Position numbers and translations under genes: made by a program. Positions 5,201-61,173 of a stretch of DNA of 64,000 bases are shown here, piece after piece (within the stretch, counting starts at the first letter, position 1; every line of letters starts with the position of its first letter). The stretch comes from Macrostomum lignano (taxonomy: Eukaryota): assembly GCA_002269645.1 (NCBI GenBank), contig NIVC01001983.1, positions 62,001 to 126,000 on the forward strand. Direction: 5' to 3'. The notes under the pieces are model-generated. The model was not told where the DNA came from. It made no database searches and saw nothing but the letters and a program-made list of their open reading frames with translations.

Positions 5201-5552
5201 TGAGTAGATGGAGACAGGGCAGATTTAGGGAGATCCATAGTGAGTAGATGGAGACAGGGCAGATTTAGGGAGATCCATAGTGAGTAGATGGAGACAGGGC
5301 AGATTTAGGGAGATCCATAGTGAGTAGATGGAGACAGGGCAGATTTAGAAAGATCCATAGTGAGTAGATGGAGACAGGGAGAGAGATTTAGGGAGATCCA
5401 TAGTGAGTAGATGGAGACAGGGCAGATTTAGGGAGATCCATAGTGAGTAGATGAAGACAGGGCAGATTTAGAGAGATCCATAGTGAGTAGATGGAGACAG
5501 GGAGAGAGATTTAGGGAGATCCATAGTGAGTAGATGGAGACAGGGGAGATTA
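2298..5552. repeat. Satellite array, 40/43-bp unit (GATTTAGGGAGATCCATAGTGAGTAGATGGAGACAGGGCA) with higher-order block duplication
   Basis: About 3.25 kb of tandem units. The variant pattern at 2641 recurs at 3871 (offset 1230) and again near 5140. Confidence 0.97.
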
Positions 5553-8413: not shown

Positions 8414-8857
8414 GGCTCTTTGGTCATTGAAGGACGGAAGCTGTAATAGAGGTTTCATCAGCTAATCGATCTCATCATTTGATGATGCATGTTACACCTC
8501 AAACTGCTAAGAAAATTGCACACTGTATCATGGCCGGAGAACCAATATCTGAACACAAGTGCCTTGCCTAAAATACGTCAGTATTCCACTTTACAATGCA
8601 TCGCATATCCTATACCATCATAGAGATGTAATAAAAATTATTTCAATATTTGCTTTCTCCCTTCATCTGATCTACAGGAAAATCAGCAGCAAGCATCACT
8701 TCCACGGATTCAACAATTTTGCAGCTAAACTCAGTTTCCACTTTTAAGGGACTGAAGGGTTTTCGACCAGTCAGTCTGATTAACACGAACAGGTTTTACT
8801 GTCTATATGTAAGCAGTGTTTCATGGGGTAATTGATTCTTCCAACTCAAAAAACTGC

Positions 8858-10985: not shown

Positions 10986-11650
10986 ACTGTCCGACAGGTT
11001 CTATCGCTGTCGAAAACTAGTAAATACAATTTAAATAAATCAAACTCATAAGCGAGAATCTTGTATTTTTAAAAACTCCTTTCGATTAGAAGCGTAAAGT
11101 TTGTGTGCCCTGCAGTGCACAGTGCCCCAATGTTTTAGTGAAATATATCTTTGTTGATTCACTCGAACATTAGAAAGTACAATCGAAAGAAAGCATAGGC
11201 AAACGTAACAGACAGTGAACTAATACACACGGAAGTCCAGCTTGGGGACTGCACTATGTATAGTGGGAAAATCACAGAGGAAATTCAACTATAGACTTAT
11301 TAAGTTGATAATATATATATATATATATAGTTAACATACCATAATATGAATATAGTAGGCACAGAACCACTGGCCCACTGCCTTGGGTGATTAGACAGAG
11401 ATAATATTATTATAATAATTAATGCCGTTCATATAAATTTATGTGAACCTGCTTTAGGTCTCGCAGTAGTATACGCTGAATAATCAATCTTAGAAAAGCG
11501 CAACAACAACATTTCTTAGAAAGGCGAGCACAACACGCACGCTAAAGCAATGAGCCATGCGTTTGTACACTTGACCAAGGCCATAGGAAGTTTAGCCCTT
11601 TAATCAGTCCAGAGCCTCTAGCTAGAGCCCAATTTGCAGTTGCTGCCAGT

Positions 11651-23076: not shown

Positions 23077-23088
23077 GATGCTTACCGC

Positions 23089-23090
<2 letters not shown>

Positions 23091-23154
<64 letters not shown>
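23091..23154. repeat. (ACA)n microsatellite shared as the 3' end of the Ingi-like LINE (+) and the tail of an RTE fragment (-)
   Basis: About 21 perfect trinucleotide units between two oppositely oriented 3' ends. Confidence 0.95.
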
Positions 23155-23560
23155 AATATATAGCCCCGCATATATGGTCACAGTCAGAGCAGGGCGCGTC
23201 AGATGGCGCGCCGCAGAGCCTGAAAGCGGACGAAGTGCGCCCCGTTAATATGGTACCCCAGCGTCGCATAGCAGGCAGTCCACATGTCGACGGGTTCGGT
23301 CAAACCCCGCCTGACCGGTCCCTGCAAGGTGAGCAGCAGGACGTCCTAAACAGGTTGGGGGCAGTAGTCCTCGGCCCGGATAACGCGACCCGCCAGTTGA
23401 AGTCGCAGCCGGGGCAAGATGATGCACGGGCGCTGCAGCTTGGCCCGATCGTACAGGGCCTCGGTCCCGACGCTCTCGTCAGCTCGAAAAGCCGCATGCA
23501 CGGAGCAGCCCTGAGTGCGCCGAGTCCAACTGCCGCTCTGGCGTAGCCGTCAGCGTTCAC
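23155..23560 (-). mobile_element. 5'-truncated, degenerate RTE-type LINE 3' fragment
   Basis: Minus-strand RRHVDCLLCDAGVP resembles RRFVDCLLADAGAP of the copy at 25095-25476. The two share the plus-strand 3' UTR motif CAGTCAGA..CAGGGCGCGT next to a (CAA)n tract. Confidence 0.65.
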
Positions 23561-30200: not shown

Positions 30201-33200
30201 AGTATCTCCAACCCTGAACTTCCTGAAGTATCTCTAACCCTGAACTTCCTGAAGTATCTCTAACCCTGAACTCCCCGAAGTATCTCTTACCCTGAACTCC
30301 CTGGAGTATCTCTAACCCTGAACTTCCTGAAGTCTAACCCTCAACTCCCTGAAGTATCTCTAACCCTCAACTCCCTGAAGTATCTCTAACCCTAAACTCC
30401 CTGAAGTATCTCTAACCCTAAACTCCCTGAAGTATCTCTAACCCTGAACTTCCTGAAGTATCTCTAACCCTGAACTCCCCGAAGTATCTCTTACCCTGAA
30501 CTCCCTGAAGTATCTCTAACCCTGAACTTCCTGAAGTCTAACCCTCAACTCCCTGAAGTATCTCTAACCCTGAACTCCCTGAAGTATCTCTAACCCTGAA
30601 CTCCCTGAAGTATCTCTTACCCTGAACTCCCTGAAGTATCTGTAACCCTGAACTCCCTGAAGTATCTCCAACCCTGAACTCCCTGAAGTATCTCCAACCC
30701 TGAACTTCCTGAAGTATCTCTAACCCTGAACTTCCTGAAGTATCTCTAACCCTGAACTCCCCGAAGTATCTCTTACCCTGAACTCCCTGGAGTATCTCTA
30801 ACCCTGAACTTCCTGAAGTCTAACCCTCAACTCCCTGAAGTATCTCTAACCCTCAACTCCCTGAAGTATCTCTAACCCTAAACTCCCTGAAGTATCTCTA
30901 ACCCTAAACTCCCTGAAGTATCTCTAACCCTGAACTTCCTGAAGTATCTCTAACCCTGAACTCCCCGAAGTATCTCTTACCCTGAACTCCCTGAAGTATC
31001 TCTAACCCTGAACTTCCTGAAGTCTAACCCTCAACTCCCTGAAGTATCTCTAACCCTGAACTCCCTGAAGTATCTCTAACCCTGAACCCCCTGAAGTATC
31101 TCTAACCCTAAACTCCCTGAAGTATCTCTTACCCTGAACTCCCTGAAGTATCTCTAACCCTGAACTTCCTGAAGTATCTCTAACTCTGAACTCCCTGAAG
31201 TATCTCTAACCCTGAACTTCCTGAAGTATCTCTAACCCTCAACTCCCTGAAGTATCTCTTACCCTGAACTCCCTGAAGTATCTCTTACCCTGAACTCCCT
31301 GAAGTATCTCTTACCCTGAACTCCCTGAAGTATCTCTTACCCTGAACTCCCTGAAGTATCTCCAACCCTGAACTTCCTGAAGTATCTTTAACCCTGAACC
31401 CCCTGAAGATTTCCAAAAACATTTCCCATCACGATTTCCCAATAGCGTCAAGTTTTGCTAGCAAGTCGCTACAAAGCATCCCGAAGGCTGTTAAAGCGGC
31501 TCTCGTTGCGGGCATCAGACCCGGCGCACTTCGGCAGAGGCTGGCAGCGGTGGCCGATGCGGCGACCGAGGCAGAGCAGCGAATATCAGCAGGTAGAGAG
31601 CCAGACAGACCAACACCAGAGCCGCTGCCCCAGCTGACATCCAGGCCATTGTTAACTTGGCAGAGTTGCCGTCCAGTTCGCCAGGTGCACCGGAGAGGAT
31701 CACGACACCGAACACGGCTACAGATACCAGCAGGGCCACAGCTAGGAGCAGCAGAGCCGTGAGCAGGCGGGTCACTCCGCTAGATGAGGCCTCTTCCGGC
31801 TGCTGGCTCACTGACAGCAGCAGCACTTGATACTTAATTAGTTTCTTCATTTCCGCCTTGTCCTGCCCTTATGGTCAGCTGTATTCTCTCGCGAAAAGTT
31901 AGAAAGTATAATTCAAAACCTTCCAAGTCCTGTCACTTTTATGTGGAGCCCTGGCTTGACTTGGGGGTGGGGCTCTCAACCCCTCCCTCCGTTCTCTTTC
32001 CCTTATCTCGCTAAATTGCACATAGCCTCGACTTATATAATATCGATTTTTGCTCTGCAATTCTTCTCGCTCGGGTTATTGCGCAACTCCTCGCTCTGCC
32101 CCTGTCTGCCCCCCCTCTGTGCCATCTCTCTCTTTCTCTTTAGTTCGATTTTTGCACCGAGTTTTCAAAAGTCACAGCGAGAGGGAAGGGTTCAGAACAG
32201 GTCAAGTCCGACATGCATAACTAGTTTTGTTGACACACTGTGGATGAGAGGTTCACGAGCTTCATTTGTCACGAAATCTGTAGGCAAGTCAGAGTTAGGT
32301 TGGGGATGAAATCAGTGTGCAGCAGCGGCAGTGGCTTACAGTGGTAAATTCCCCGAAGGGGGAATTAAAAGAATTCGGTGACAGTCACGACTTGTTATAA
32401 ATACATGAAAATAGAAAAATAAATCTGTTTATTTTCATAGACTAACATAGGCTTCAGGTTCTCGCAATGAGAAGTCTAGATATAATAAGAAGCCTGATGC
32501 TGTGGATTTCAGGCTCAGGTAATATGAAGTTCAGGCAATATAAAGTTCAGGTAATATTAAGTTCAGGTAATAAGAAGTTCAGGTAATAAGAAGTTCAGGT
32601 AATAAGAAGTTCAGGTAATATGAATTTCAGGTAATATAAAGTTCAGGTAATATGAGGTTCAGGTAATATAAAGTTCTGGTAATATGAAGTTCAGGCAAAA
32701 TAAAGTTCAGGTAATATTAAGTTAAGGTAATAAGAAGTTCAGGTAATATGAGGTTCAGGTAATATAAAGTTCAGGTAATATTAAGTTCAGGTAATAAGAA
32801 GTTCAGGTAATATGAATTTCAGGTAATATAAAGTTCAGGTAATATAAAGTTCAGGTAATATGAATTTCAGGTAATAAAAAGTTCAGGTAATATAAAGTTC
32901 AGGTAATATGAGCTTTAATAAGGTTCAGGTAAAGTATATCCCTCCCGAAAATCCGCTCAGCTCGGCAAGGAGCGGGCCGTCCTAGGCCGGCGCCGAGAGC
33001 AGATGAAACGACTCAGCCGCAGCCTCTCCTCCGCCTACGAGACCAAGAAGAAGGAACTGTCCGAGAATGAGAACCATTCTCAACTGAGCAACCTGGAGCG
33101 CAAGTGGCAGCATCACGAGCAGAACAATTTTGTCATGAACGAGTTTATCGCGTCGAAAACGGCTGAGTCCGACACCAGCCTGGTTTCCAGCAAGGTCCTG

Positions 33201-33787: not shown

Positions 33788-34169
33788 CTGCAATCTATGA
33801 TCACACTTTTCCTCTGTTTCTTTCCGATATCGTTAAAATTGTTTCAACTCTTGCAATAAATTTATTACAAACTGCAAACATAATTGCATGGTCTGGCAAT
33901 ATCCTTATAACAAACTATTTTGTTTTAAACCTTAACAAACATTATTGCAGAAAGCATCTCAGTTTAAATTCAAAGTCAGCAAATTTTTAATTCTCTGTAT
34001 CTCAATTTTCAGTTTGTGATTTATGCAATACATGAAATATACAGAAGTAGAATATTTGCAAACGCTTTTTTATAGACGCAAACGTGTTTATCACTTTAAT
34101 AAATTGCTGAACCAATTAATGTTCAGATGTCTCTAGCAAGTATGCTTTGTGGCAGTGTCTAAAACAAAC

Positions 34170-34224
34170 AAACTAACTAACTAACTGACGGACTGACAAA
34201 CTAATTAACTAAATAACTAAATAT

Positions 34225-34291
<67 letters not shown>

Positions 34292-34361
34292 GCTAACTAA
34301 CTAACTAACTAATTAACTAACTAACTAACTAACTAACCAACTAACTAACTAACTAACTAAT

Positions 34362-34436
<75 letters not shown>

Positions 34437-34437
34437 T

Positions 34438-34490
<53 letters not shown>

Positions 34491-34491
34491 T

Positions 34492-34528
<37 letters not shown>

Positions 34529-34610
34529 TTAACTAACTAACTAACTAACTAACTAACCAACTAACTAACTAACTAACTAATTAACTAACTAACTAACTAA
34601 CTAACTAACC

Positions 34611-34655
<45 letters not shown>

Positions 34656-34734
34656 GCTAACTAGCTAGCTAACTAACTAACTAACTAACTAACTAACCAA
34701 CTAACTAACTAACTAGCTAGCTAACTAACTAACC

Positions 34735-34811
<77 letters not shown>

Positions 34812-34816
34812 GCTAA
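34170..34816. repeat. (TAAC)n microsatellite
   Basis: About 650 bp of near-perfect tetranucleotide repeat. Confidence 0.98.
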
Positions 34817-35834
34817 GTAAATAAGTGACTGGCTGAATAAAAGGGTACAATTCATTTATTTTTTTATTTGTGCCGTCTTCACTCCGTTTCTCTATCTTTA
34901 ATTTTTTTACATTTTTTCACCACACTTCGCGCCCATCTTGTTACTCGTACAATAAATCCCTTATTCTCCTTGGAACTGTCATGAACTGATAATGGCTAAT
35001 CCGTAAATCCTGCATCGATTTAAAATGAAATTCGATTCTCAACAATTCACCCACAGGTAATCCGATAGATAAGCCTATTGCGAAGCGGAACGCTAAGCTT
35101 GTTGAACGAACGAACAAAAATTATTTAAAACAAGTCATTCTCTCAGCCCTTTTGTTTGTCTTGTGAAGCCCAGCCATGCAGGTGATATAATATCATTATT
35201 ATTACTGTTATTACCTGTTGAAATCAGCAATTTACACTGCCGCAAGCCGTCAGGTGAGGCGCGGGACCAGCGGCAGTTAATTAATGTTGAAGCAATTTCT
35301 ATTTGAGTTGTTAAACAAGCAAACGTCAATAGCTCATCAGCGACTTCAGCAAAAGGCCTCGCGCCATTTTAGTGGCTCAAAAAATATGCAATTGCCGTTC
35401 ATCCGCACGCAGTTAGCGTTTTTGAAGCTGCATTTAAAGTAATTGTGGTTATAGAATTTAACAAAGCATGACAGAGAATAACAATGGGAACCTTGGTTTG
35501 TCACTCTACCTAATAATTTGGGGCAATTCTGCCCATAATGCTGACTCCTAAGCTGCTAACAAGCGCGCCAACAGATGATGTAGTAGATTACAAATCTAGA
35601 TTCACAGGAATCTGAAGCTACAAAAGTCATTTTCAATGTTTGTTTCAACCGAAAAAAAATTAACGTTTTATTTTGCGAATTTGCGAATGCTAGGCTACAG
35701 ATAAGAAGATAACAATAATAAATAATAAAACGTGTAAATAAAAACAATGCCCCAGTATCATATTGGAGGCCTGATGTGCTTGGTGCATGCTGCTTGTGCA
35801 ATATAATGTTGACACTAACAGAGTTTTGCTAAAG

Positions 35835-36646: not shown

Positions 36647-45037
<8,391 letters not shown>

Positions 45038-45874: not shown

Positions 45875-48812
45875 CACAAGGGAATTAGGAATTAGGGAAT
45901 TAAAAGAAGATTCAAACATCAGGGAATTAAAAGAAGATTCACAAATCAGGGAATTAAAAGAAGATTCACACACGAGGGAATTAAAAGAAGATTAACACAC
46001 GAGGGAATTAAAAGAAGATTAACACACGAGGGAATTAAAAGAAGATTCACACACGAGGGAATTAAAAGAAGATTCACACATCAGGGAATTAAAAGAAGAT
46101 TCACACACGAGGGAATTAAAAGAAGATTCACACACGAGGGAATTAAAAGAAGATTCACACACGAGGGAATTAAAAGAAGATTCACACACCAGGGAATAAA
46201 AAGAAGATTCAAACATCAGGGAATTAAAAGAAGATTCACACATCAGGAAATTAAAAGAAGATTCACACATCAGGGAATTAAAAGAAGATTCACACATCAG
46301 GGAATTAAAAGAAGATTCACACACGAGGGAATTAAAAGAAGATTCACACACGAGGGAATTAAAAGAAGATTCACACACGAGGGAATTAAAAGAAGATTCA
46401 CACACGAGGGAATTAAAAGAAGATTCACACACCAGGGAATAAAAAGAAGATTCAAACATCAGGGAATTAAAAGAAGATTAACACACGAGGGAATTAAAAG
46501 AAGATTCACACACGAGGGAATTAAAAGAAGATTAACACACGAGGGAATTAAAAGAAGATTCACACACGAGGGAATTAAAAGAAGATTCACACACCAGGAA
46601 ATTAAAAGAAGATTAACACACGAGGGAATTAAAAGAAGATTCACACATCAGGGAATTAAAAGAAGATTCACACACGAGGGAATTAAAAGAAGATTCACAC
46701 ACGAGGGAATTAAAAGAAGATTCACACACGAGGGAATTAAAAGAAGATTCACACACGAGGGAATTAAAAGAAGATTCACACATCAGGGAATTAAAAGAAG
46801 ATTCACACACGAGGGAATTAAAAGAAGATTAACACACGAGGGAATTAAAAGAAGATTCACACACGAGGGAATTAAAAGAAGATTCACACACGAGGGAATT
46901 AAAAGAAGATTCACACACGAGGGAATTAAAAGAAGATTAACACACGAGGGAATTAAAAGAAGATTCACACACGAGGGAATTAAAAGAAGATTCACACATC
47001 AGGGAATTAAAAGAAGATTCACACACGAGGGAATTAAAAGAAGATTCACACACGAGGGAATTAAAAGAAGATTCACACACGAGGGAATTAAAAGAAGATT
47101 CACACATCAGGGAATTAAAAGAAGATTCACACACGAGGGAATTAAAAGAAGATTAACACACGAGGGAATTAAAAGAAGATTCACACACGAGGGAATTAAA
47201 AGAAGATTAACACACGAGGGAATTAAAAGAAGATTCACACACGAGGGAATTAAAAGAAGATTCACACACCAGGAAATTAAAAGAAGATTAACACACGAGG
47301 GAATTAAAAGAAGATTCACACACCAGGAAATTAAAAGAAGATTAACACACGAGAAAATTAAAAGAAGATTAACACACGAGGGAATTAAAAGAAGATTCAC
47401 ACATCAGGGAATTAAAAGAAGATTCACACACGAGGGAATTAAAAGAAGATTCACACACGAGGGAATTAAAAGAAGATTCACACACGAGGGAATTAAAAGA
47501 AGTTTCACACACCAGGGAATAAAAAGAAGATTCAAACATCAGGGAATTAAAGATTCACACACGAGGGAATTAAAAGAAGATTCACACACGAGGGAATTAA
47601 AAGAAGATTCACACACGAGGGAATTAAAAGAAGATTCACACACGAGGGAATTAAAAGAAGATTCACACACCAGGGAATAAAAAGAAGATTCAAACATCAG
47701 GGAATTAAAAGAAGATTAACACACGAGGGAATTAAAAGAAGATTCACACACGAGGGAATTAAAATAAGATTAACACACGAGGGAATTAAAAGAAGATTCA
47801 CACACGAGGGAATTAAAAGAAGATTCACACACCAGGAAATTAAAAGAAGATTAACACACGAGGGAATTAAAAGAAGATTCACACACGAGGAAATTAAAAG
47901 AAGATTCACACACGAGGAAATTAAAAGAAGATTAACACACGAGGGAATTAAAAGAAGATTCACACATCAGGGAATTAAAAGAAGATTCACACACGAGGGA
48001 ATTAAAAGAAGATTCACACATCAGGGAATTAAAAGAAGATTCACACACCAGGGAATAAAAAGAAGATTCAAACATCAGGGAATTAAAAGAAGATTCACAC
48101 ATCAGGAAATTAAAAGAAGATTAACACACGAGGGAATTAAAAGAAGATTAACACACGAGGGAATTAAAAGAAGATTCACACACGAGGGAATTAAAAGAAG
48201 ATTCACACATCAGGGAATAAAAAGAAGATTCACACACGAGGGAATTAAAAGAAGATTCACACACGAGGGAATTAAAAGAAGATTCACACACGAGGGAATT
48301 AAAAGAAGATTCACACACGAGGGAATTAAAAGAAGATTCACACACCAGGGAATAAAAAGAAGATTCAAACATCAGGGAATTAAAAGATTAACACACGAGG
48401 GAATTAAAAGAAGATTCACACACGAGGGAATTAAAAGAAGATTAACACACGAGGGAATTAAAAGAAGATTCACACACGAGGGAATTAAAAGAAGATTCAC
48501 ACACCAGGAAATTAAAAGAAGATTAACACACGAGGGAATTAAAAGAAGATTCACACACGAGGAAATTAAAAGAAGATTCACACACGAGGAAATTAAAAGA
48601 AAATTAACACACGAGGGAATTAAAAGAAGATTCACACATCAGGGAATTAAAAGAAGATTCACACACGAGGGAATTAAAAGAAGATTCACACACGAGGGAA
48701 TTAAAAGAAGATTCACACATCAGGGAATTAAAAGAAGATTCACACACCTGGGAATTAAAAGAAGATTCACACACGAGGGAATTAAAGATTAACACACGAG
48801 GGAATTAAAAGA
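45875..48812. repeat. 27-bp satellite (GGGAATTAAAAGAAGATTCACACACGA), about 2.9 kb
   Basis: Accounts for all CESSFNSLV and NLLLIPSCV ORFs. Confidence 0.98.
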
Positions 48813-50034
48813 AAAAGGTTTTCATAAGAAGTTAATCGATTTTTTTTTTAGAGGACATTTAAGATCGCTTTAAGTTATGCTTTTATCGAATTAGGAAAGC
48901 AGAAATAGCACTAAACCATGATAGCTCCTTACCTTTCTAAGAATACATGTATAACAACGAACACAATAGTTCAACCTTGACACCAAAGCTACAACCTGGT
49001 AGGCCTTAATTATCAATAATTAAGCTTTCATGGTCACGCTTCATTAATCTGTTCATCTAAGCTAGGCTGTGACAGGGCACATCCGGCCACTAAGAAAACG
49101 CTTCGCCCCTAAACACCGCTTATCCAAGCTTGCAGCAAGTAAGACTGAAACTAGAAGCTTGCCACAATTAGCAGCAATTTGCGCTTCGATTGACTTCAGC
49201 ACACGCAGGCTGGCACATCCGCCAGTATAATCGATAAAGATCATTTATTCTTTTTTTAAAATAACATTCGCGTATAAATGTAGATCAATGCGCCTCTTGA
49301 ACGGACGCTATTCAGCGCCAGAAATTGCAAAAGCAACAACAACAAGGAAGCCGGTCAGGGGAAAAAACACATGTGTACAAGTACAGGGCGAAAAAATAAT
49401 AACTGATGAAAAATTTCGATTTCTCAAAGTCGTGGGAAAATATAGAAAATAGACATGGACTAAGCAGGTAGGGAAAAATCAAGATGATTACAAAAATATA
49501 GCAAAAAATAATGAGCGAATGCATCGAATCAATAAAATTAATCAATGGACAGAACCCGCACTCATTAGGAGATGGCGAGCCTGCTAAGCATTTGAGCACA
49601 CAATGCCTATAAATAAGCAATAAATATAATACTAAAAAAGCCAGCAAAATCAGGTGTAAAAAAGCCATTTGAATCAGTGGAATAAATATTAATTAAATTC
49701 AATCAATTTGGCAGAACCAAAGCTCGGTTTGGGTTCGAATAGTGTGTACAGGGAAAAATCAGTGCTTTAAATACATACTGATTGGAATATAGAAATTGCC
49801 TGAATCAACTGGAAAGGTGATACAAAGTACTGTCTATATAAATAACAATAAATAACAGCTAAAAGTGCAAGCAGGACAGCAGTTAGCGCGAAAAGTTAAG
49901 CCACGGAAGTTTAAGAATTAGCATATTAGTAAAGAACAAGTAAAGAACAGTTCTTGATTGCGTATAAGACGTAGCAAAGCTACGATATGAGAACGAATCG
50001 TTAAAAACGTTTAACCAAATCTAACAGGGATGGG

Positions 50035-50692
50035 ACAGGGGGTGGCATCTCACTGATGGGTCAAGGATGGGGTGGCATCTCACCGATGGATCAAGGATGG
50101 GGGTGGCATCTCACTGATGGATCAAGGATGGGGTAGGGGGTGACACCCCTCTGATGGATCAAGGATGGGATAGGGGGTGACACACCTCTGATGGATCAAG
50201 GATGGGGTAGGGGGTGACACCCCTCTGATGGATCAAGGATGGGATAGGGGGTGACACCCCTCTGATGGATCAAGGATGGGATAGGGGGTGACACCCCTCT
50301 GATGGATCAAGGATGGGATAGGGGGTGACACACCTCTGATGGATCAAGGATGGGGTAGGGGGTGACACACCTCTGATGGATCAAGGATGGGGTAGGGGGT
50401 GACACACCTCTGATGGATCAAGGATGGGATAGGGGGTGACACACCTCTGATGGATCAAGGATGGGGTAGGGGGTGACACCCCTCTGATGGATCAAGGATG
50501 GGGTAGTGAGTGACACCACTCTGATGGATCAAGGATGGGGTAGTGAGTGACACCACTCTGATGGATCAAGGATGGGGTAGTGAGTGACACCACTCTGATG
50601 GATCAAGGATGGGGTAGTGAGTGACACCACTCTAATGGATCAAGGATGGGTAGGTGGTGGCACCCTTCTGATGGATCAAGGATGGCGTAGGG
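50035..50692. repeat. 37-bp G-rich minisatellite (GATGGATCAAGGATGGGGTAGGGGGTGACACCCCTCT)
   Basis: Tandem copies about 150 bp beyond the stop of the receptor ending at 50846. Confidence 0.95.
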
Positions 50693-50845: not shown

Positions 50846-53648
50846 TTAGTTTGCCGAGTTGTCCCGCTTCTTTTTCTTGGCCGAGTATTCACCAATGAAC
50901 GAGCCGTCCTCGGTGAAATCGCCCACTAAAGAGTATAAAATGATTTAAGTTTATTATATAATGGAATTATTGCACAATTTATAGATACAAACACACAAAT
51001 GAGCACTCACTATCGCCCATGTCGTCTTTGTAGACGTCCAATTCTCGATCGTCTTGACTCTTGATTGACACACCCGAGTAGGAATTCAGCGACATTCTTT
51101 CAGCCCGCATTGGCGCCTCCTCCGCCGGCTGGTACTCCTTGAAGTGCTCCTCCTTGACCTCCAACTCGGGATGGTTGCCCTGCTGGCGCTCCTTCTCGTC
51201 GACCAAGTAAGTCTGGCCCGAGTCGCGTCTCAGAAGCAGCACCAGGAGTATGATTGCAATTAGAACAATGAGAGCGGCCAGGGTGATGCCAGCAATGAGG
51301 CCGGCACTGGCGCTGGCTAGCCCAGCAGCCGGCTGCTCGTCGCTGATCCAATTGAAACCCAGTCTAATGCTTAAATCGGCGAGCAAATCAGCCGAGTCAA
51401 AGTCGGTGGAGTAAAAGCAGGTAGAATCGGCTCGGCAGTCTCGGTCACCAAATGACACAATAGGCTGGCCGTAGCGCTCTTTGTGCAAGTTTAGATTAGT
51501 AAGCTTCGTACCGGAGGAGTCTTTGTACCCAAAATTAAATACTGGCGTTAAATATTTGTACTTTTGTAGAATAGAGATGACTTCTTTTTTAGCGTTAGGC
51601 AATATTTTAAACAACAAACGGTTCGTCTCGGGATAGAACTTTGATACAGAAATATCCTGTCCATGGATGGTATGAATGTTTTCAAGCAGCTCGTTGTCAA
51701 TCTTAAAATAGGCAAACACTTTGACACCGCTTGCCGCCAACCGACGAGTCATGTCGGGGCTCAAAGAGACTTCAAAAGTACCGCCAACTTTGTTGGAGCA
51801 TTTCTGCTCAGAACAAGGCTTAGCAGACGTTCGATTGAAACTTAAAATCGTGGGTCGCTTAAGAAAGATGACATTGCTGCTGCTCTGGATGTTGTATGAT
51901 GGTAGGCCAACCTTCTGGGCATCGGCAGGGCTGACAGATGCATCGCACACGAATCGATGAGTGAAGTTCAGATAAGTTGAAGAATCGGAGACAGGCACCC
52001 GGGAGATTGTCAGGTTTAGTGTTTTGGTTTCGTTTGTTTTAAGAGTTGACTGGCGAACGGTGGAAACAGAAGAGGAAAACATCTGATTAAATTGGTCCAG
52101 ATCGAGCTTTTTCCACTTCTGATCAGCGGTGCCAATGGTGTGAAAGGCTGGAATCACGTCGACTTGGTCCATATTAGTGTAGTACACTGTGCAGTTATAA
52201 GAGAGAGTCTCGTTTTCAATTGCAAATACTACTTGAGGCAAGTCTCCCGAAACAATTTTGCTGTCGCTATCGTGCAATCTTGTTAAAAACTGGGGCATGG
52301 AGACAATTTTAACGTCAAACTTGAAGCTCTTCCCGCCAGCCTCGCACCTGTATTCACCGGAGTCGTTCTCGAAAAGCTCAGCTGGAAATTCGATTACATT
52401 TCCTGTTCGAGAAATTTTCAGTCCCTGAACATAAGTCCATTCGCTTTGACCGTTGGACACAATTTGTTGGTTGCCATGGTAAAATCTAAACACCTGGTTA
52501 GGATCGTCACAAATAATTGGACACACTAACGGGGTGTAGTCCATGCCAGCAAATATGCTCACTGATCGAGCCGTGCCCGAGCCAACAATCGAACATTCAG
52601 TGGTTCTTGAACCCATTTGCTTATAATTCACAATAGTAGTAGATATTCTCTGCTTAACCTCATCAACCTTGAAATACGGCTGGCTATGACCAGCAAAAGA
52701 AACTAGAGTGCAAATACCGATTTCTTTGGGCGATCCTCGGTCTCTGAAGAAGTTTGATATGGCGGTTGTTAGTCCATATTTCGAATAGTACAACCTGCCG
52801 TCATTCAAGCTTAATCCAATATGTTTTAACAAATTAATATTATTCTCATTCATCTTTGAGTAGTAGTTAACAAACATAGAGACCAAATGCGACTGGAAAT
52901 TCTGACAGTCGCCGGCATCGAATTGCAAAATTGCCCCAATGTTGATCTTTGCCTTGATAAAATCCGGAGCTGACCGAATCCGATCGACAATCTGCTGGTC
53001 GATAAAGGGCACATAAGAGAATGGATCGTCGGTAGTGTTCATCTGGATCATGAAATTGATGGCCGGCACAGTTAGAAAGCGCTTATAAAAGCTGTCAATA
53101 ATGGCGTCGTTAGACGATGAACTGGGCGATTTGCTAATAGCGTCTAGGTTGTAAACAAACAGACTGTTGGATGTGATTGTGCCGACAGGAAATTCAACCC
53201 GGATGTACAGTTGAATCTTTTGAGAAAACACGTTATCGTAAGTTTGCATCGAATCCAAAAGTGTAAAATAGAAGTCAATGCCTTCCTTTCCGCTCACTTT
53301 ACTAATGGTGAAGGGCATAGTGCCCGGACAATAATTACTCTGCGACTGAACGCTACTAAGAGCGACTTCCTCCGGAGGACTCGACTCAGTACACCTGTAA
53401 ACTAGAACCTTGGTGCCAGAGCTGTTGCCAGTATCGCCGCCAACGTTAATCCTGATAATAAGCCGCTTATCTTTGTTAAGAAAGGCCAACTTGTTGGATA
53501 CGCCAACTTCCCAGACGTCGTCCCAGGACAGCATAATTTTGTTAGACTGTGAGTACACAAACTGTGGCGACTTCTGCGCAACACTAACTGCTAGTAGGGC
53601 CGCCAGCAGCACGCATAGCCAGCTGAAAGTCTGGCTCCAAGCCATCAT
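50846..53648 (-). CDS. Divergent L1/neuroglian-family type I membrane protein, paralog A (degenerate Ig domains, TM, FIGEY tail)
   Basis: Exon 1 is 53648-51011 (signal peptide, ectodomain with an Ig motif CPII..DSGEYRC, TM, RRDSGQTYLVDEKE..FKEYQP). Phase-1 intron 51010-50926 (GTGAGT..TTTAG). Exon 2 is 50925-50846 and reads (M)GDFTEDGSFIGEYSAKKKKRDNSAN*. Confidence 0.85.
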
Positions 53649-56330
53649 GCATCAAAATGGCAAAGGGAGCATTGTGAAAGGATTCTAAACTTTTAATAAG
53701 TCTAAGACAAACATTAGAGTTTCCAGTACAGTAGACATATTGAATTTTCCTACCAAAAGTGGGGGATCGGCCCTACCACAGCAAAAAGTGGGGAGGGGGC
53801 AGTGGTGCCAATAAACCTTTCAGGCTTTATGAAGTTTAATAAAATCTAAATAAAAACACTAGAGAAGTTCTCTAAATAAAAACACTAGAGAAGTTCTCCC
53901 AAATAAAATTCAGATTTTAAGAATTCTTCGACTTGAAATTTTCGCATTGCAAAAGGCTCAAAATGAATGAACGCGTATTTATTTTTGTTCGCAAATCGAT
54001 ATTATAATTTTGCAAAGCGGCGAAAAAATCAGTTATAAACACGACGAGAGAAAACATTTTTTTCGAGGACGCACGAGTAACAGATTTGAGAATTTCGCGT
54101 AACAAAAATCGGTAAAAAAAACACGCGGGATTAATTATTAGGAACATGGCGATCGGGTAAGCAGGTATTAGAGCAGTTATTATAAAAAGCATAGAAATAT
54201 TGTGAGCTAATGAAGCAAGGAAAGCAGTCAGAATTTACAGCACAAAGAGGTGCAAAGCTGACAAAAAAGTTTAGAGACATGTAACTGCACCTCTGAATGG
54301 CAATTATTTTACGAAATTAATAATTTTAGGACAGAAAATCAAATAAAACACTGCACTGCACACGGGGTAAGAGTCGGGTGAAGGAAATTTCTCCTGGCCA
54401 GTTTCTGTATTCAAAGCTCCTTGAGCTGACTAGGGCCTAAACTAAAGCTTGCACAACCAGCCGACCTTATGATTATGCATTATAACAAGAATGCTAGGAA
54501 CAAGATAACGATCTTGATCTGACCCCTAATGCCCACAGGCAAGCCAGGCCTTATTCTGTAATATCTGCACATGCAGTATGTAGGACCCGCAATCTATGCA
54601 GTCAACAGGCCATCAATTCAAACAAGTTGTACGCATGGCGCATATTTTCCCTAGTTAGTTATATGGGAATACGGCCGCGAAATCTCTCCCAGCTCCTATG
54701 GGACCAATGCAAATGGAACTTGTTATTGCCTCTCTTGCCGCCTAGATACGTGCTACACCTCCATCCGCTGGCAAGGTACGCTTTCCCATAGGTTAAAAAA
54801 ATAGCAAAAGACCAATTCGGCTGGCTAAATATAACAGTAAGAGGAATGCCGACAGGGGTTAGTATGCCATTCTTAGAAACTAAAATGTTGAACAAATTCC
54901 AGTTTAAACTAACTAAGCTTGACTAAAGGTGGTATTTTAAAGTAAAAAAATGACAAAAAGTTGATTATTACACAATTAAATGTTGCTTTTAAAACAAAAG
55001 AAGCAGAAAAAGCAATGAGTAAAGCAGTAAATTTGCTGCAAATAGCAGCCACACAGCTGACTAAATTAAAAATACGTTACTGTAATTCAAAACTTACGCA
55101 ATGTTACTAACAAAAATATTGACAGCTGTGCTTTTACATTAAACTCATTAGGTTAGCTATTCAGGACTTAATATATCGGATAAATGAAGAAAAAAACTGT
55201 AACAGACACTGATATGCTGCTTTTGACTAAATGGGAGGAAAAAAAGCAAAAATTGATTGCTGCTTGAAGCAGAAAAAAGTTAGAATTCTAAACACATTGT
55301 ATTGCTACCGTGGAGATTAGAACTTGAAAAAAACACACCTCTTTAAAAAAATAAACGCCTAAATAAAATTGCAATAGCCCGGCTAATCGCGGCGGTTCTG
55401 ATTAGTATGAAGATTGAATATTTAATATTTGATCGGGGTTATTTCGAGTAGCCTCACTGCCACCGTTGATATCATTTGCATCAGGCTTAGTAGTATCAGA
55501 CCACACAGCTCGGGGGTGATTATTTAGCTTAGACCCACACTAAACTATAATAAGCTATCTGAAGGCAGAACAGAGCGCATATCGACCGCCCTCCCTCCTG
55601 CCTTCCTTGACCGGCCTTAAACCTTCCTCTCTAAACCTCAGACCGGCCCGCACGCACGCACTGGGCGTGGGCAGAACTAGAGAAAGAGAAAAAATGGTCA
55701 AACCCGCTTCCAAAAATGCATTATGCAGATATATATGGAAGCTGACTTGTGCTAACAAATATCTATATCTATATATGACTATATTGATAAACTAAGACGA
55801 AATGCAAATACAGTTAGAAATGAGCTACAGCTCAGTCATTGAGAGCAACAGAACCGCTAACCTAAGTCTTCATCTGTCTTTTTAGTTTAGATATTACTGT
55901 TCAATAGACGGAGTTTGCTACTACGGTAGCTGAGGCAGCGATGAGATTGCACACAGGACATAGAAACATATTCTAATACATGTAATCTCTCAGATTTTTG
56001 TAAATTTGTTCAAACGGACAAAGTACTGTGATATGCATACAGATAACTAACGTTATGCGAAAACGCTATAAAAAGCAAAGGAAAGGTTGATACCATAGTG
56101 TATAGCCGCATAACAAGTATAAATATTTTAAACTGAACGAAAAACCTACAGAGGCACAAAGCCAGACAACACACAGAGAAAAACACTGCTAAATATTATA
56201 AAATATGACACGCTAGCAAATCATTACACTAGGCTGGCAATCCAATAAGCTATAGATAAGCTTAACACTACCCTCAGCTGACTGAACAGTTATCCACCTG
56301 GCTGTCTATCGCCACTTTCGTTCTCGCCTT

Positions 56331-59300
56331 TCACACTTGATGAGCGTTGAAGGCGTCGCGTCTACGCGCGTCCGTAGAATAATCGCCGATGAATGAGCCG
56401 TCCTCCACGAACTTTGCTGTAAAAGACAAGGAATTGCAAAGTTTTGAAATCCTAGTATTTCCATCGGATGCTAAAGCTTTCACACTCTCTCAAGGATTTG
56501 TCTCTCCCTTGAATCTCAAGACTTTGCCACCTTTAGCAACTCGGTCTTATGTGCCAGCGGGCCAGGCAGTCACATTAACTTTGTGACTAAACTGGAATCT
56601 CGGCTTGGCTCTGCTTGTGCAATCAACGCCCTTGAGGGCCAACCCCCAAGACACGTTAATTAAAGTGTACATGCCTAACGATAAATAAAGTTAGGGCCGC
56701 TGTACACTCCTGTGTGTGCCTGCTCAGGGGAGTCGGCGGAATGGGAAGTAAGTAATGCCTCTCGCTGATTGTGTGACAATGTCGCTTAAAGTGCGCCAGG
56801 ATGCGCACAGAGAGGGTCTCTTTTAGATTCAGAGGATTAAATTTACAATTCAGAGCATCAAGAAGTTCACACTTGATTTATTTGAACTTTTTTTATCCCA
56901 AAATGCCCTCTCATGACCCCAGATTTGTTTATAATCCAGCACTTGAATAATTTTAACCTGAGTTCGCAATGTTGAGCTTTGTGCTTGGCCCCATTTACAC
57001 AATAGTTGCGCATATGGGCGGAAAGACAGGGCAGAATTAGTCTATAAAATTTATTAACAGGCGCTGTGAGACTGATAAGAGATAAGAGATAAAGGCGGGC
57101 TAAATACTCTTCGTCTCGACAATTTCTTTAGGCTTAAATTCTTTACATGGCAAATGGAGCACTCGGCCAGTCATAACAGCGGGAGCTCATTCATTTTGAT
57201 CGCAGTTAGTTTTACGATTCTAGAAATTAGCCTTTTTTGGGATGGAGCTTGACCATATTAGGTTTGCTTTGCCATGAAGATTATGCCAATTAAGTCATGC
57301 TATGTATCGTACACACTGAACAGTACTTACTGCAGTCTATATCGTCGTTGCCATATTCCTCAAGCTCTTGGTCATCTTTGCTACCAGCAGAGATACTCGA
57401 GCCCACTGACATCTGCCTGGCCTTCAGCGGGCCCTCCTCGGGTCGCTGATACTCTTTGAACTGCTCCTCCTTGGCTTCCTGCTCAGGATGATTGCCCTGC
57501 TGGCGTTCCTTCTCGTCGAGCAAATAGGTCTGACCGGTGTCGCGTCGAAGAAGGAAGACGATGAGTACGGCAATAATTAGCAGTAAAACAATAGCCAATA
57601 TGATTCCCACAATGATGCTAGTGCTGGCAGTCGCCGCATTTTCGCCAACAACAGGCTGACCCTTGAAGTCCAGGCCAAGCATGAGGCCTTGAAGAGTGGT
57701 GTCAGCGTCAAAGTCGGTAGAGTAGAAGCAGAGATCGTCCGATCGACAGTCGCGCTTACCAGCAACAAGTTGGCGCGGGCCGTAGCGCTTCTTGTCAAAA
57801 ACTAGATTGGGCGATTTTGTGCCCTCTTCGTAGCGAAAGTTGAATATTGGTGTCAGCGTCTTGCGCGACTGAAGCTCGGTTAACACCTCAGGCTTTGTTA
57901 TGCGATTAACTTTAAAGGAAAGCTTTGTTGTATCCGGATCGTAGGATACTTTTGCCACATCCGGCTGATTAAGCACCTTGACAAAGTCCAAGTAATCATC
58001 ATCAATCTTGAAGTAACCTGTCACGGAAACGCCAATCGCTTTCAAATAGGCGGCAAGTTGAGGCTTCAGTGAAAATTGGAAATACGCCCCATCCGAGGCG
58101 GTGCACGACTGCAAGCTACAGTTCTTTGCCATGCTTATGTCGAAGCTGTTTAGTAGAGGACGGCTCAAAAAGAAAACACTGCTGCCACTCTGCACGCTGT
58201 AAGATGGCATACCAATCTTTTGGGTGTCAGCTGTGCCAACAGTTACGTCACACACGCAACGATGCGTGAAATTCAATCCAGTTGACGGATTTGCTGGCGG
58301 AACTTTGCCAATATTGAATGTTAGCGTCATCGATTCAAGTTGAGAAACTTTCGGCACAGTTATAACATTGGACACCGGAGTAGCCATTAGACGATTGAAA
58401 CTATCTAAATCGTATTTTTTCCAATTGTTTTCGCCCAAGGCAGCACTGTAAAAGACCGGTAAGACATTTGTAGTTGCAACGTTGGTAAAGTATGCCGTGC
58501 AGTTATAAGATAGTCCTTCGCCTTCCATAGCATACACTGTTGGTGGCAGATTACCAGAAATTTCTGAGCTAGAGCTGCTACCATACGATTTTGACGTAAA
58601 CTGCGGCATGGAAATTACTTGCGTGTTAAAGGTGAACCTTGTACCACCAGCGACGCACGTATAGGCACCCGAATGTTTATTGTAAATTATCGGCGGAAAC
58701 TCTATTATGTTGCCCGTCTTGGAGATTCGAATCCCATTCACTTCTGTCCAATCGCGCCGCGTATCCGGAACAAGACCCTTATCACCGTGAAAAAATCTGT
58801 ACACTTGGTTTGGACTGTTGCATATAATGGGACAAACAAGTGGAGTGTAGTCCATACCAGAGAATATTGTGACCGCTTTTTGATTAGTAGAACCGATTAT
58901 TTTGCAATTTGAGTTTCGATCTCCAAGTGTCTTGTAGGACAGCTCAGTCTTTGGTATCTTCTGCGCAATAGAGAATGTTTTGTCATAGGGTTGGCCTTGG
59001 CCTGCGAACGATAAAGTTGCGCAAATACCAATCTGAACCGGACTCTTGGAAGAAAAAAAATCAGAGATTATGGAACTGAGACCGTATCGCGAGTAGTGCA
59101 ACAGACCAGTCTCCGTGTCCAAATAGATATGCTTAAGTAGATTCTGGTTTCTTTCATCCAATTTTGAGTGATAGTTGACAAAGAGCGACGCCCTTGATAT
59201 CTGATAGGACTCGCATGTGCCAGCGTCAAAGTTAAGAATAGCTCCGATGTTAATCTTCGGTTTGAGAAATTCTGGAGCCTCCTTGATTATTTGGCTCATG

Positions 59301-59914
59301 GCAGGATCCAAAAATTGCGTACTATCAAACTCTGTATCCGGCATGTTCTCCGACATTCGCTTCAGAAACTGTTCAGCCCCTGCAGAAAGGAAACGCCTAC
59401 CATCCGGGTTCAGTTTGCCAATGGCATCTAAATTCCATACAAATAGGCTATTGGATTCAAGAACGCCAGACGAATGCTCGATGCGTACTCGCAATTCGAT
59501 TTTGTCAGAAAAGGCATGCGAGTATGGTAGTTTTGACGACAGTAGCGTGAAGTCGAATTCATTTTCGCGCTCGTTTTTAAGCCTCACTGAAAATGGTATA
59601 GTGTCTTTACACTGGACCTCATTTGAGCTGGACTTCAATGATTCCATGTCCATCATTGACTCAACATAATCTCGCCTGCACTTGAACTGTAGAATTCTTC
59701 TCAAGCCAGTACCAACATTTCCTACGACTACGATTTTAATTATTAGCCGTTTGTCAGTGTTCAAAAATGCTAACATGTTTGACGATCCAACTTCCCATGT
59801 TTCTTCCCAGGACAGCATGATCTTGTTGGTCTCGGAGAACTTGAATCTTGGCTTTTCATTGGCTGCGAGAGTGGCAGCAATTATGCAGAAGAGGATCAGG
59901 TGTTGATAGTGCAT
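56331..59914 (-). CDS. Divergent L1/neuroglian-family type I membrane protein, paralog B (FIGDY tail)
   Basis: Exon 1 is 59914-57331 from MHYQHLILF (signal peptide). Phase-1 intron 57330-56417 (GTAAGT..TTACAG). Exon 2 is 56416-56331 and reads (T)KFVEDGSFIGDYSTDARRRDAFNAHQV*. Collinear with paralog A along its whole length (KIMLSW..WEVG.SN.LAFLN.DKRLII, SGMDYTPLVCPIIC, RDCR.D..CFYSTDFD). Confidence 0.85.
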
Positions 59915-61173
59915 AACAGCATGAATATAGAAGTTTAGATTTGTTTTTGTGTTACATTGTTCAAAACACAGCAACATGAATACAATAAGTCCATGATACT
60001 TTGCTACATTATCATTTTAAGATTATATAAAGTAGCAGAAAAAATACTTATCATTTTCACTGCTATGCTTTTGATATCAGTAAACCAGAAAAGCTCAAAA
60101 CTTTCAAATTTAGACAAAAATGATCTCCCTTAAAATCAACATTTTTCTGCCAACCAAACTTCTGGGAAAATTTGTTTTACACTTATTATCATGTGCATAC
60201 AATGTACAACATAGAATTATAAAAAATGAAACTTACAGAAGTTTACAATTATGAAATATATGAAAAATAGACAAATGAAAGACTAAAGACGAGACTGTCA
60301 CCACTGCCTTAGCCCTACAAAGTACAGATCATAGAAGGTTGGCAATAGTCAGTCAATTAACAATGTCAACTTATTATCTCTAGGACCAAGTTTAAGTTCT
60401 GCTTCTGCTATCATTAGGGCCTATTGGTTTTTTTTAGCTCATGTAATGTTACAAGTGTTTAAACAGCAGTTGTGCCAGAGGGTTTGCTTAATCAGGATAT
60501 AATCACTAGCCTATATATAGGTCACAAAGATGATTTTACAAATATAATAATTATATTTACCTTATAGATTGATATTCGCAATCATATTCAAATTTTAACA
60601 AGCTTATTATTAACTTTTGTTTAATTCAAACAACAAAGTATAGCCATTGGCTTTAAGCTGGAAATTGATTTTCAACTTTTATTATAATATTATATATTTA
60701 TATATATCTATGACAAACCAAAGTCTCATAGCTCTACTTTAAGTAGAAGTGTCTATTAGCAAATATTAGGCTAAATTTTGAATAATATAAAGATAAAATT
60801 GCATGTTTTATTTTAATAGTTTAAATAAATTAACTGTTGTAACAAGGCTACAAATTTTTATTTGTCATAAATAGTTATTTTGTCAAATAAACAATGTTTA
60901 TCATAACAATATATTGGGTTTTCGGTTGGTAAAGTTGGTTCATGTATCTAATCAACATGAAATTCCTATTTTATAGCTAAATGGTCATATTTATATAGAT
61001 ACAAAGTTAAAAGTAAAAACAAAGGAAAAGTTTTGTTTAGATTAATATACAACAATTATAGTTAATTGCTTTTTATTTTTGTAAGTAAAGATTGACTAGA
61101 ATCTTTGATTTAATTCTAAAACATCTTGTCCATTAAATATTTATAGCAATTTAACAAATTAAAACTATATATA

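What the first reader, a model, noticed from the sequence alone, without database searches (positions are those of the whole stretch)
50846..59914. Tandem pair of FN3-less, highly divergent L1/neuroglian-like receptors
Seen: two collinear ~900-aa type I membrane proteins whose tails match the L1 family (RR..G.TY...EKE...G......F.EY.P, then EDGSFIG[E/D]Y). Known: canonical L1/neuroglian has 6 Ig plus 5 FN3 domains in about 1200-1300 aa. Here no FN3 pattern is visible and the ectodomain is only about 770 aa. By-eye comparison with remembered neuroglian sequence suggests eroded Ig1-Ig4: GTITSNSLFV vs GTATSNSVYV at the end of Ig1 with the canonical Cys apparently lost; IGLSLNDGRLYYSKY vs MTLDPEGNLWFSNV in Ig2; an intact C..DSGEYRC Ig3; and AIENETLSYNC in Ig4. 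An unrecognised ~170-aa Cys-containing module follows. Inference: a lineage-specific receptor family that keeps ankyrin coupling while its ectodomain diversifies, as expected of recognition or adhesion-specificity molecules.
Basis: partly seen in the sequence, partly recalled or inferred. Interest (0 to 1): 0.8.

Follow-up and report, generated by a model that had tools for sequence, protein, structure and literature searches.

The report
Flatworm receptors with an L1-type tail
Two neighbouring genes of the flatworm Macrostomum lignano encode membrane proteins that keep the complete ankyrin-binding tail of the L1/neuroglian adhesion molecules, but their outer part has no fibronectin repeats, only about four immunoglobulin-like domains and one domain with no known relative.

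Summary
Two intact, same-strand genes (905 and 889 aa, 46% identical) lie exactly at the stated coordinates. Each has a signal peptide, a roughly 750-aa ectodomain, one TM helix and a roughly 100-aa tail.

The tail passes Pfam Bravo_FIGEY. It is collinear with neuroglian/L1CAM/CHL1 tails at 33-41% identity and includes EDGSFIG[E/D]Y.

No FN3 or Ig model reaches threshold. AlphaFold2 (pLDDT 82.5, pTM 0.77) gives five domains:
- D1: all-beta.
- D2: mixed alpha/beta.
- D3 and D4: Ig-like.
- D5: alpha/beta, next to the membrane.

The best structural matches to the whole model are the folded-back Ig1-4 "horseshoes" of DCC and Sidekick. D5 alone (pLDDT 88.7) has no significant neighbour in PDB or BFVD.

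An exhaustive HMMER search of 1.84 billion proteins finds ectodomain relatives only in M. lignano. There are seven long-form groups including the two window genes, plus four tail-less short forms, and the genes often sit in tandem pairs. Databases hold them only as auto-named uncharacterised proteins, and I found no paper on them.

Verdict: a lineage-restricted, non-canonical variant of the L1 kind. It probably acts as an adhesion or recognition receptor coupled to ankyrin. Function is untested.

The parts
50846..53648 (-). Gene g1, 905 aa. Exon 1 is 51011-53648, the intron 50926-51010, and exon 2 50846-50925 including the stop.
   Evidence: ORF. Splice sites were read. The spliced translation is about 99% identical (100% as the search table rounds it) to the g1 part of P0001 and 99% identical to P0002.
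56331..59914 (-). Gene g2, 889 aa. Exon 1 is 57331-59914, the intron 56417-57330, and exon 2 56331-56416 including the stop.
   Evidence: The N- and C-termini match the g2 part of the fused public model P0001.
53577..53648 (-). g1 signal peptide (aa 1-24, MMAWSQTFSWLCVLLAALLAVSVA).
   Evidence: Hydrophobic N-terminus read from the translation. The cleavage site is inferred.
53127..53576 (-). g1 D1 (aa 25-174), an all-beta sandwich. It has an invariant Cys pair 21 residues apart (ecto C62/C83) and no canonical B-F disulfide.
   Evidence: AF2 secondary structure. Invariant columns.
52623..53096 (-). g1 D2 (aa ~185-342), a mixed alpha/beta domain with 7 strands and 5 helices. It has an invariant Cys pair 65 residues apart (ecto C224/C289).
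52284..52622 (-). g1 D3 (aa 343-455), an Ig domain with the motifs LVCPIIC and DSGEYRC.
   Evidence: Sub-threshold Pfam Ig_3 hit. Weak, non-significant obscurin Ig match in PDB (E 0.82). Titin-like Ig-repeat hits to profile positions 403-451. hhalign match to L1 Ig3.
51861..52283 (-). g1 D4 (aa 456-596), an Ig-like beta sandwich with a long insertion and Cys (LSYNC)...Cys (HRFVC).
   Evidence: Conserved Cys.
51336..51860 (-). g1 D5 (aa 597-771), an alpha/beta domain next to the membrane (beta-alpha-beta-beta-beta-alpha-beta). It has two local Cys pairs (CSEQKC, DCRADSTC) and an invariant CFYSTDFD motif.
   Evidence: AF2 pLDDT 88.7, pTM 0.85. No Foldseek hit at E<1e-3 in PDB or BFVD. No PDB sequence hit. 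Alignment.
51231..51326 (-). g1 transmembrane segment (aa 775-806).
   Evidence: Hydrophobic stretch. It is followed by the RRDSGQTY stop-transfer sequence.
50885..50911 (-). g1 EDGSFIGEY, the ankyrin-binding motif of the L1 family, located in exon 2.
   Evidence: The motif is defined in PMC2196473.
56379..56405 (-). g2 EDGSFIGDY motif, located in exon 2.
57548..57637 (-). g2 transmembrane segment (aa 760-789).

Best explanation
g1 and g2 are tandem paralogues of a Macrostomum-restricted family of type I surface glycoproteins. They are non-canonical members, or chimeric derivatives, of the L1/neuroglian kind.

Shown:
- The whole cytoplasmic domain is homologous to and collinear with L1-family tails, including the EDGSFIG[E/D]Y ankyrin-binding motif.
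- The ectodomain has no FN3 repeats.
- It is predicted to consist of four N-terminal domains followed by an alpha/beta stalk domain (D5) with no detectable relative. Of the four, D3 and D4 are Ig-like, D1 is a divergent beta sandwich and D2 is mixed alpha/beta.
- In the model these four domains are packed in a folded-back, horseshoe-like head.

Inferred mechanism:
- The head mediates homophilic or heterophilic recognition at cell contacts.
- The tail recruits ankyrin-spectrin. The FIGEY tyrosine acts as a phospho-switch, as in neurofascin and LAD-1.
- Tandem duplication and divergence generate several specificities.
- Tail-less short forms may act as GPI-linked or secreted partners or decoys.
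For: Gene structure:
- Both genes have intact ORFs and matching gene structure, with one phase-1 intron just upstream of the FIGEY exon.
- A second, 97-99% identical copy of the locus in GCA_002269645.1 keeps both reading frames without gaps. Non-synonymous to synonymous codon changes are 7:7 and 2:5.

Tail:
- Bravo_FIGEY is above Pfam's cut-off.
- A tail profile retrieves neuroglian, NrCAM, L1 and CHL1 tail fragments from arthropods, priapulids, annelids, nematodes, rotifers and vertebrates.
- The alignment has invariant G, Y, E, S and Y residues and F-EDGSFIG-Y.
- The ankyrin role of EDGSFIGQY, and its loss on Tyr phosphorylation, are documented in PMC2196473.

Ectodomain:
- AF2 gives pLDDT 82.5 and pTM 0.77, with five domains.
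- The top Foldseek hits are DCC Ig1-4 (3laf, E 2e-12, TMt 0.49, rmsd 10 A over 599 columns) and Sidekick Ig1-4.
- Extended cadherin arrays aligned over a similar length give rmsd 43-69 A. The modelled head is therefore compact.
- D5 is modelled confidently but has no structural neighbour.

Family:
- Relatives occur only in M. lignano: seven long-form groups including g1 and g2, at 35-53% identity, and four short-form groups at about 20%.
- Cysteines are invariant in every domain.
- Two other family loci are also tandem pairs.
Against: - There is no experimental or expression evidence of any kind.
- Outside D3 there is no significant sequence similarity to L1 ectodomains. Descent from L1 therefore cannot be told apart from capture of an L1 tail by another IgSF gene.
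- The horseshoe reading rests on an AF2 model built from only 11 paralogues. I could not inspect its coordinates or PAE. TMt of about 0.5 is moderate, and no L1-family horseshoe was among the 50 listed hits.
- The fold of D2 is undetermined.
- The FIGEY motif is missing from three of the seven long-form groups, so ankyrin coupling is not a family-wide property.
Confidence: 0.7

Rival explanations
1. Chimeric origin. A Macrostomum-specific IgSF ectodomain family (D1-D4), originally GPI-linked or secreted like the short forms, acquired D5 plus the TM and tail of the resident neuroglian gene by exon shuffling or retroposition. Under this reading the proteins are not descendants of L1 Ig1-4.
For: - Short forms carry D1-D4 without D5, TM or tail.
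- The ectodomain shows no L1 sequence signal except a generic Ig motif in D3.
- The whole ectodomain, TM and most of the tail sit in one exon. As I recall, canonical L1 genes have many exons. The single exon fits a retroposed or reshuffled origin.
- Horseshoe heads also occur in DCC and Sidekick, so they are not specific to L1.
Against: - The short forms are the most divergent members (about 20% identity) and could equally be secondary truncations.
- D3's best match within an L1 protein is the positionally equivalent Ig3.
- No donor gene was identified.
Confidence: 0.3
2. These are the actual, radically remodelled neuroglian orthologues of Macrostomum. The canonical 6Ig+5FN3 gene has been lost and this family took over its roles in septate-junction, axon and epithelial adhesion.
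For: - Searches with g1 and with the tail profile returned no canonical M. lignano L1.
- The tail is conserved along its whole length.
Against: - Those searches use a lossy word index. It missed even 35-53% identical paralogues, so the absence means little.
- The M. lignano genome itself could not be searched here.
Confidence: 0.12
3. The genes are decaying or are gene-model artefacts with no function.
For: - The public UniProt model P0001 is a fusion of g2 and g1 with a spurious internal deletion.
- The locus sits among satellites and a LINE element.
Against: - There are two intact ORFs of about 890 aa, canonical splice sites, and signal peptide plus TM.
- Cysteines are invariant across 11 paralogue groups.
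- The AF2 models are confident.
- A second, gap-free copy of the locus exists.
Confidence: 0.03

Closest known systems
L1 family of IgCAMs (L1CAM, CHL1, NrCAM, neurofascin; Drosophila neuroglian; C. elegans LAD-1/SAX-7)
   Same: - Type I topology.
- A complete Bravo_FIGEY cytoplasmic domain, collinear from the juxtamembrane R-x-x-G-x-x-Y..EKE through F-x-EY and S-x-SL to DxxL..Y and F-x-EDGSFIG-x-Y.
- An N-terminal four-domain head that models as folded back.
   Different: - The canonical architecture is six Ig plus five FN3 (PMC2196473). Here there are at most four Ig-like domains and no FN3.
- D2 is alpha/beta, and a novel D5 stalk replaces Ig5-6 and the FN3 repeats.
- No significant ectodomain sequence similarity exists except in D3.
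- The proteins are about 900 aa rather than 1200-1300 aa.
- The -TFV/-SFV type C-terminus seen in the aligned neuroglians is absent.
Ig1-4 horseshoe heads of DCC/neogenin and Sidekick (PDB 3laf, 5z5k, 5k6u, 5k6z)
   Same: These are the best global structural matches to the modelled ectodomain: E 2e-12 to 4e-10, TMt 0.44-0.50, about 595 aligned columns, rmsd about 10 A.
   Different: - Sequence identity is 9-12%.
- Pfam detected no DCC/neogenin-type cytoplasmic domain.
- As I recall, DCC and Sidekick also carry FN3 arrays, which are absent here.
C. elegans LAD-2 and the short LAD-1 isoform (non-canonical L1 variants)
   Same: They are precedents for variation within the L1 family. The short LAD-1 isoform lacks Ig1-2 (PMC2196473). 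As I recall, LAD-2 lacks the ankyrin motif.
   Different: Those variants still keep standard Ig and FN3 modules. The Macrostomum family has lost the FN3 region entirely and gained an unrelated domain.

Membership tests
L1/neuroglian family | Cytoplasmic Bravo_FIGEY domain (Pfam PF13882) above the gathering score | tested here: met
   29.5 bits (g1) and 36.5 bits (g2) against a cut-off of 23.8. The score would be higher with the FIGEY exon added. A tail profile hits L1-family tails from many phyla.
L1/neuroglian family | Ankyrin-binding motif EDGSFIGQY with the regulatory tyrosine | tested here: met
   EDGSFIGEY in g1 and EDGSFIGDY in g2, invariant in the alignment with neuroglian, L1CAM and CHL1. 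The motif is defined in PMC2196473. Actual ankyrin binding cannot be tested with these tools.
L1/neuroglian family | Six N-terminal Ig domains | tested here: not met
   No Ig model reaches threshold. The AF2 model has five domains in all. D3 and D4 are Ig-like, D1 is a beta sandwich without the canonical disulfide, and D2 is alpha/beta.
L1/neuroglian family | Three to five membrane-proximal FN3 repeats | tested here: not met
   No fn3 hit at E<=1 in g1 or g2, and none at E<=0.1 in any of the 11 family members. The membrane-proximal domain D5 contains helices and has no FN3 or other neighbour in Foldseek.
L1/neuroglian family | Detectable sequence homology of the ectodomain to L1 Ig1-4 | tested here: not met
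   hhalign of the family profile against a full-length L1-like protein aligns only D3 (to Ig3, E 5e-4). D1, D2 and D4 give E 0.19-0.5.
L1/neuroglian family | Horseshoe arrangement of the first four domains | tested here: inconclusive
   The best Foldseek hits are the DCC and Sidekick horseshoes (TMt 0.44-0.50, rmsd about 10 A). Extended arrays give rmsd above 40 A. This is a model only, and I could not see its coordinates or PAE.
Immunoglobulin superfamily (at least one Ig-like domain) | Beta sandwich with a B-F disulfide and the D-x-G-x-Y-x-C motif | tested here: met
   D3 has C..(55-59 aa)..DSGEYRC. A weak PDB sequence match to an obscurin Ig domain is not significant (E 0.82). Titin-like Ig-repeat proteins hit this motif at E 2e-10 to 9e-4. 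452 Foldseek hits at E<1e-3, and the 50 listed are almost all Ig or cadherin arrays.
FN3 or any solved fold, for D5 | Structural match to a known domain | tested here: not met
   Foldseek against PDB gives best E 9e-3 and TM<=0.33 (normalised by query). BFVD gives best E 1.7e-2. A profile search against PDB sequences gives nothing at E<=10. AlphaFold DB was not available.
DCC/neogenin or Sidekick | Family-specific cytoplasmic domain and FN3 array | tested here: not met
   Pfam finds only Bravo_FIGEY in the tail, with no neogenin-type C-terminal domain and no fn3.

The most novel reading that the evidence does not exclude
Macrostomum has replaced, or supplemented, the otherwise invariant bilaterian 6Ig+5FN3 neuroglian architecture. 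The replacement is a multigene family in which an L1 tail is driven by a remodelled horseshoe head and a stalk domain of a previously undescribed fold (D5). This would show that the ankyrin-coupling module of L1 can be redeployed on a different ectodomain.
Probability: 0.2. Interest if true: 0.7.

Novelty: new variant of a known kind. Interest (0 to 1): 0.45.

Why it matters
As I recall, the 6Ig+FN3 ectodomain of L1-type adhesion molecules is conserved together with the ankyrin-binding tail from nematodes and insects to mammals.

A family that keeps the tail intact but has a much shorter ectodomain without FN3, and with a domain of unknown fold, would be a natural experiment. It would show which parts of L1 are needed for membrane-skeleton coupling and which for recognition.

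M. lignano is amenable to transgenesis and RNAi, so the question can be tested. The D5 domain is also a candidate new fold.

The limits are that the family is restricted to one lineage, nothing is known of its expression, and the proteins already sit, uncharacterised, in public databases.

Tried and rejected
1. Word-indexed protein searches.
- They returned only two or three full-length hits and missed paralogues that exhaustive HMMER found.
- The tail search returned only fragments shorter than about 210 aa.
- They therefore cannot show whether M. lignano has a canonical neuroglian.

2. PDB sequence searches with the ectodomain profile and the D5 profile.
- The only hit was a non-significant obscurin Ig match, and D5 gave nothing.

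- Only D3 aligned.

4. An SEA-like or ferredoxin-like identity for D5, suggested by its beta-alpha-beta-beta-beta-alpha-beta order.
- Foldseek found no neighbour of any fold class, so I do not claim it.

5. dN/dS.
- The paralogues are too diverged (46% aa identity).
- The two locus copies are too similar, with 14 and 7 changed codons. That is only weakly consistent with constraint.

6. A search for a missed FIGEY exon downstream of the 873-aa paralogue in L002.
- None was found within 3.4 kb, and the reading frame ends in an in-frame TGA.

7. Literature searches by Pfam name, gene identifiers and topic.
- No paper covers this family. Bravo_FIGEY appears only as a Schistosoma genotyping marker.

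8. The closest non-family tail, P0044, comes from a 584-bp metagenome contig of unknown organism. This was uninformative.

Full report
**What is there**

The window comes from the flatworm Macrostomum lignano. The g1 product is 99% identical to NCBI 'hypothetical protein BOX15_Mlig011430g1', which UniRef names 'Neurofascin/L1/NrCAM C-terminal domain-containing protein'.

Two long ORFs lie on the minus strand, at 50979-53648 and 57290-59977. Each continues across one GT..AG intron into a short terminal exon that encodes the FIGEY motif.

- g1 = 53648..51011 + 50925..50846, 905 aa.
- g2 = 59914..57331 + 56416..56331, 889 aa.

These models reproduce the termini of the public models. UniProt entry P0001 turned out to be an erroneous fusion of g2, with an internal deletion, and g1.

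The two proteins are 46% identical end to end, and the window has no further copy. The same tandem pair is present at 97-99% nucleotide identity on contig NIVC01001207.1 of GCA_002269645.1, with both frames gap-free.

**Tail**

Pfam reports Bravo_FIGEY above threshold in both proteins and nothing else significant.

A profile of four family tails retrieves neuroglian, NrCAM, L1 and CHL1 tail fragments from chelicerates, crustaceans, priapulids, annelids, nematodes, rotifers and vertebrates. E-values go down to 1e-21.

In a multiple alignment the tail is collinear over its whole length at 33-41% identity. The shared elements are:
- juxtamembrane R-x-x-G-x-x-Y-x-V-x-EKE;
- F-x-EY;
- S-x-SL;
- D-x-x-L-x-x-Y;
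- an invariant F-x-EDGSFIG-x-Y.

EDGSFIGQY is the documented ankyrin-binding motif, and phosphorylation of its tyrosine abolishes binding (PMC2196473). Homology of the tail is therefore solid. Ankyrin binding itself is inferred.

**Ectodomain**

No fn3 model hits g1 or g2 at E<=1, and none hits any of the 11 family members at E<=0.1. The only Ig signal is below threshold and falls in one domain.

AlphaFold2 on an 11-paralogue alignment gave a confident model, with pLDDT 82.5 and pTM 0.77. It has five domains:

| Domain | Predicted character | Conserved cysteines |
|---|---|---|
| D1 | all-beta | invariant pair 21 residues apart |
| D2 | 7 strands plus 5 helices | invariant pair 65 residues apart |
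| D3 | classical Ig | C...DSGEYRC |
| D4 | Ig-like with an insertion | LSYNC...HRFVC |
| D5 | alpha/beta | two local pairs (CSEQKC, DCRADSTC) |

Foldseek against PDB ranks the folded-back Ig1-4 horseshoes first:
- DCC (3laf, 5z5k) and Sidekick (5k6u, 5k6z), at E 2e-12 to 4e-10;
- TMt 0.44-0.50 and rmsd about 10 A over about 595 columns.

Extended cadherin arrays aligned over similar lengths give rmsd 43-69 A. Linear three-Ig tandems give mostly TMt 0.2-0.3 (up to 0.46). I read this as a compact, horseshoe-like head. It is an inference from a model whose coordinates I could not inspect.

D5 folded alone is even more confident (pLDDT 88.7, pTM 0.85; order beta-alpha-beta-beta-beta-alpha-beta). 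It has no neighbour at E<1e-3 in PDB or BFVD, with TM<=0.33 normalised by query against PDB. It also has no PDB sequence match. D5 is not FN3.

Profile-sequence comparison with a full-length L1-like protein aligns only D3. It matches the positionally equivalent Ig3 at E 5e-4. D1, D2, D4 and D5 score at noise level.

- GTITSNSLFV forms the last strands of D1.
- IGLSLNDGRLYYS is a beta hairpin in D2.
- LSYNC is the B-strand of D4.

Homology to neuroglian Ig1, Ig2 and Ig4 is nevertheless not demonstrated.

**Family and distribution**

An exhaustive HMMER search of 1.84 billion representative proteins with the g1+g2 ectodomain profile found 18 hits.

- Ten are family members, and all are from M. 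lignano.
- The other eight are giant Ig-repeat proteins that match only the D3 F-G motif.

The family has seven long-form groups including g1 and g2, at 35-53% pairwise identity. It also has four short-form groups at about 20% identity. The short forms end after D4 in a short hydrophobic C-terminus and have no D5, TM or tail.

Two other family loci are also tandem pairs.

FIGEY is present in g1, g2, P0004 and P0005. It is absent or degenerate in the P0028/P0030, P0007 and P0036 groups. For P0030 the frame ends in TGA and no FIGEY exon lies within 3.4 kb downstream.

Between g1 and g2 the tail is the best-conserved part, at 59% against 43-52% for the ectodomain domains. Across all long forms it is not, at 43% against 35-45%.

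**Interpretation**

The best-supported reading is a lineage-restricted, non-canonical variant of the L1 kind. It has an adhesion or recognition head, a novel stalk, and an L1 tail that probably couples to ankyrin-spectrin under tyrosine-phosphorylation control.

I cannot tell whether the ectodomain descends from L1 Ig1-4 or whether an unrelated IgSF family captured the L1 tail. The single-exon ectodomain and the tail-less short forms keep the chimera scenario alive.

Whether M. lignano also has a canonical neuroglian could not be determined with the tools available.

**Novelty**

The proteins are in NCBI and UniProt with automatic names only. I found no paper that mentions the genes or this architecture.

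I rate the finding a new variant of a known kind, of moderate interest. The tail-plus-FN3-less architecture and the orphan D5 fold are unusual. Everything about function is inference.

Noticed in passing
window 18678-23546 (+): Consecutive ORFs encode an endonuclease/reverse-transcriptase domain (Exo_endo_phos_2), RVT_1 and RNase H. This is a non-LTR (LINE-type) retrotransposon, apparently broken into several frames.
   Followed up: partly
window 215-1245, 2309-5557, 7665-8415, 8853-10996, 12953-13511, 30047-31408, 39229-40012, 45894-48813: The window is unusually rich in long minisatellite arrays with 20-44 bp units and up to about 108 copies at 85-98% match. Examples are a 40-bp unit x79 with a 492-bp higher-order period, and a 27-bp unit x108. 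Several 'ORFs' of 150-460 aa are just these repeats.
   Followed up: no
window 41144-42305 and 34163-34824, 40326-40720: There is a perfect (GATA)n microsatellite of about 290 copies at 100% match. (AACT)n has about 165 copies and (GTA)n about 132.
   Followed up: no
window 50038-50692: A 37-bp tandem array (about 16 copies) starts about 150 bp downstream of the g1 stop codon, within or just after the 3' UTR. The same array is present in the other assembly copy, L001, where BLAST aligns it at many offsets.
   Followed up: partly
window ~55885 (between g2 and g1) vs L001 7136-7750: The second copy of the locus (GCA_002269645.1) carries about 610 bp more here. Identity is 99.2% on one side of this point and 97.0% on the other, which suggests an indel or a haplotype or homeologue difference.
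   Followed up: no
public model P0001 (UniProt A0A1I8GV.., 1558 aa): This gene model fuses g2 and g1 into one protein and deletes about 235 residues from the middle of g2. It is an annotation error, not biology.
   Followed up: yes
window 59915-59977: The g2 ORF extends 21 codons upstream to another in-frame ATG (MLLCFEQCNTKTNLNFYIHAV...). This extension is not hydrophobic, and the public model starts at 59914, so 59914 is the likely start.
   Followed up: partly
L002 and L003 (GCA_002269645.1 contigs NIVC01002404.1, NIVC01000506.1): Other members of the family also lie in same-strand tandem pairs. One pair is a 723-aa plus an 873-aa long form. The other is two short forms of 723 and 658 aa that are 72% identical. 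A retroelement pol gene lies upstream of the second pair.
   Followed up: partly
short-form family members P0009-P0012, P0043: These proteins stop after D4 and end in a short hydrophobic stretch, which could be a GPI signal or a minimal TM. P0010 additionally has a Thr/Pro-rich, mucin-like insertion between D2 and D3.
   Followed up: no
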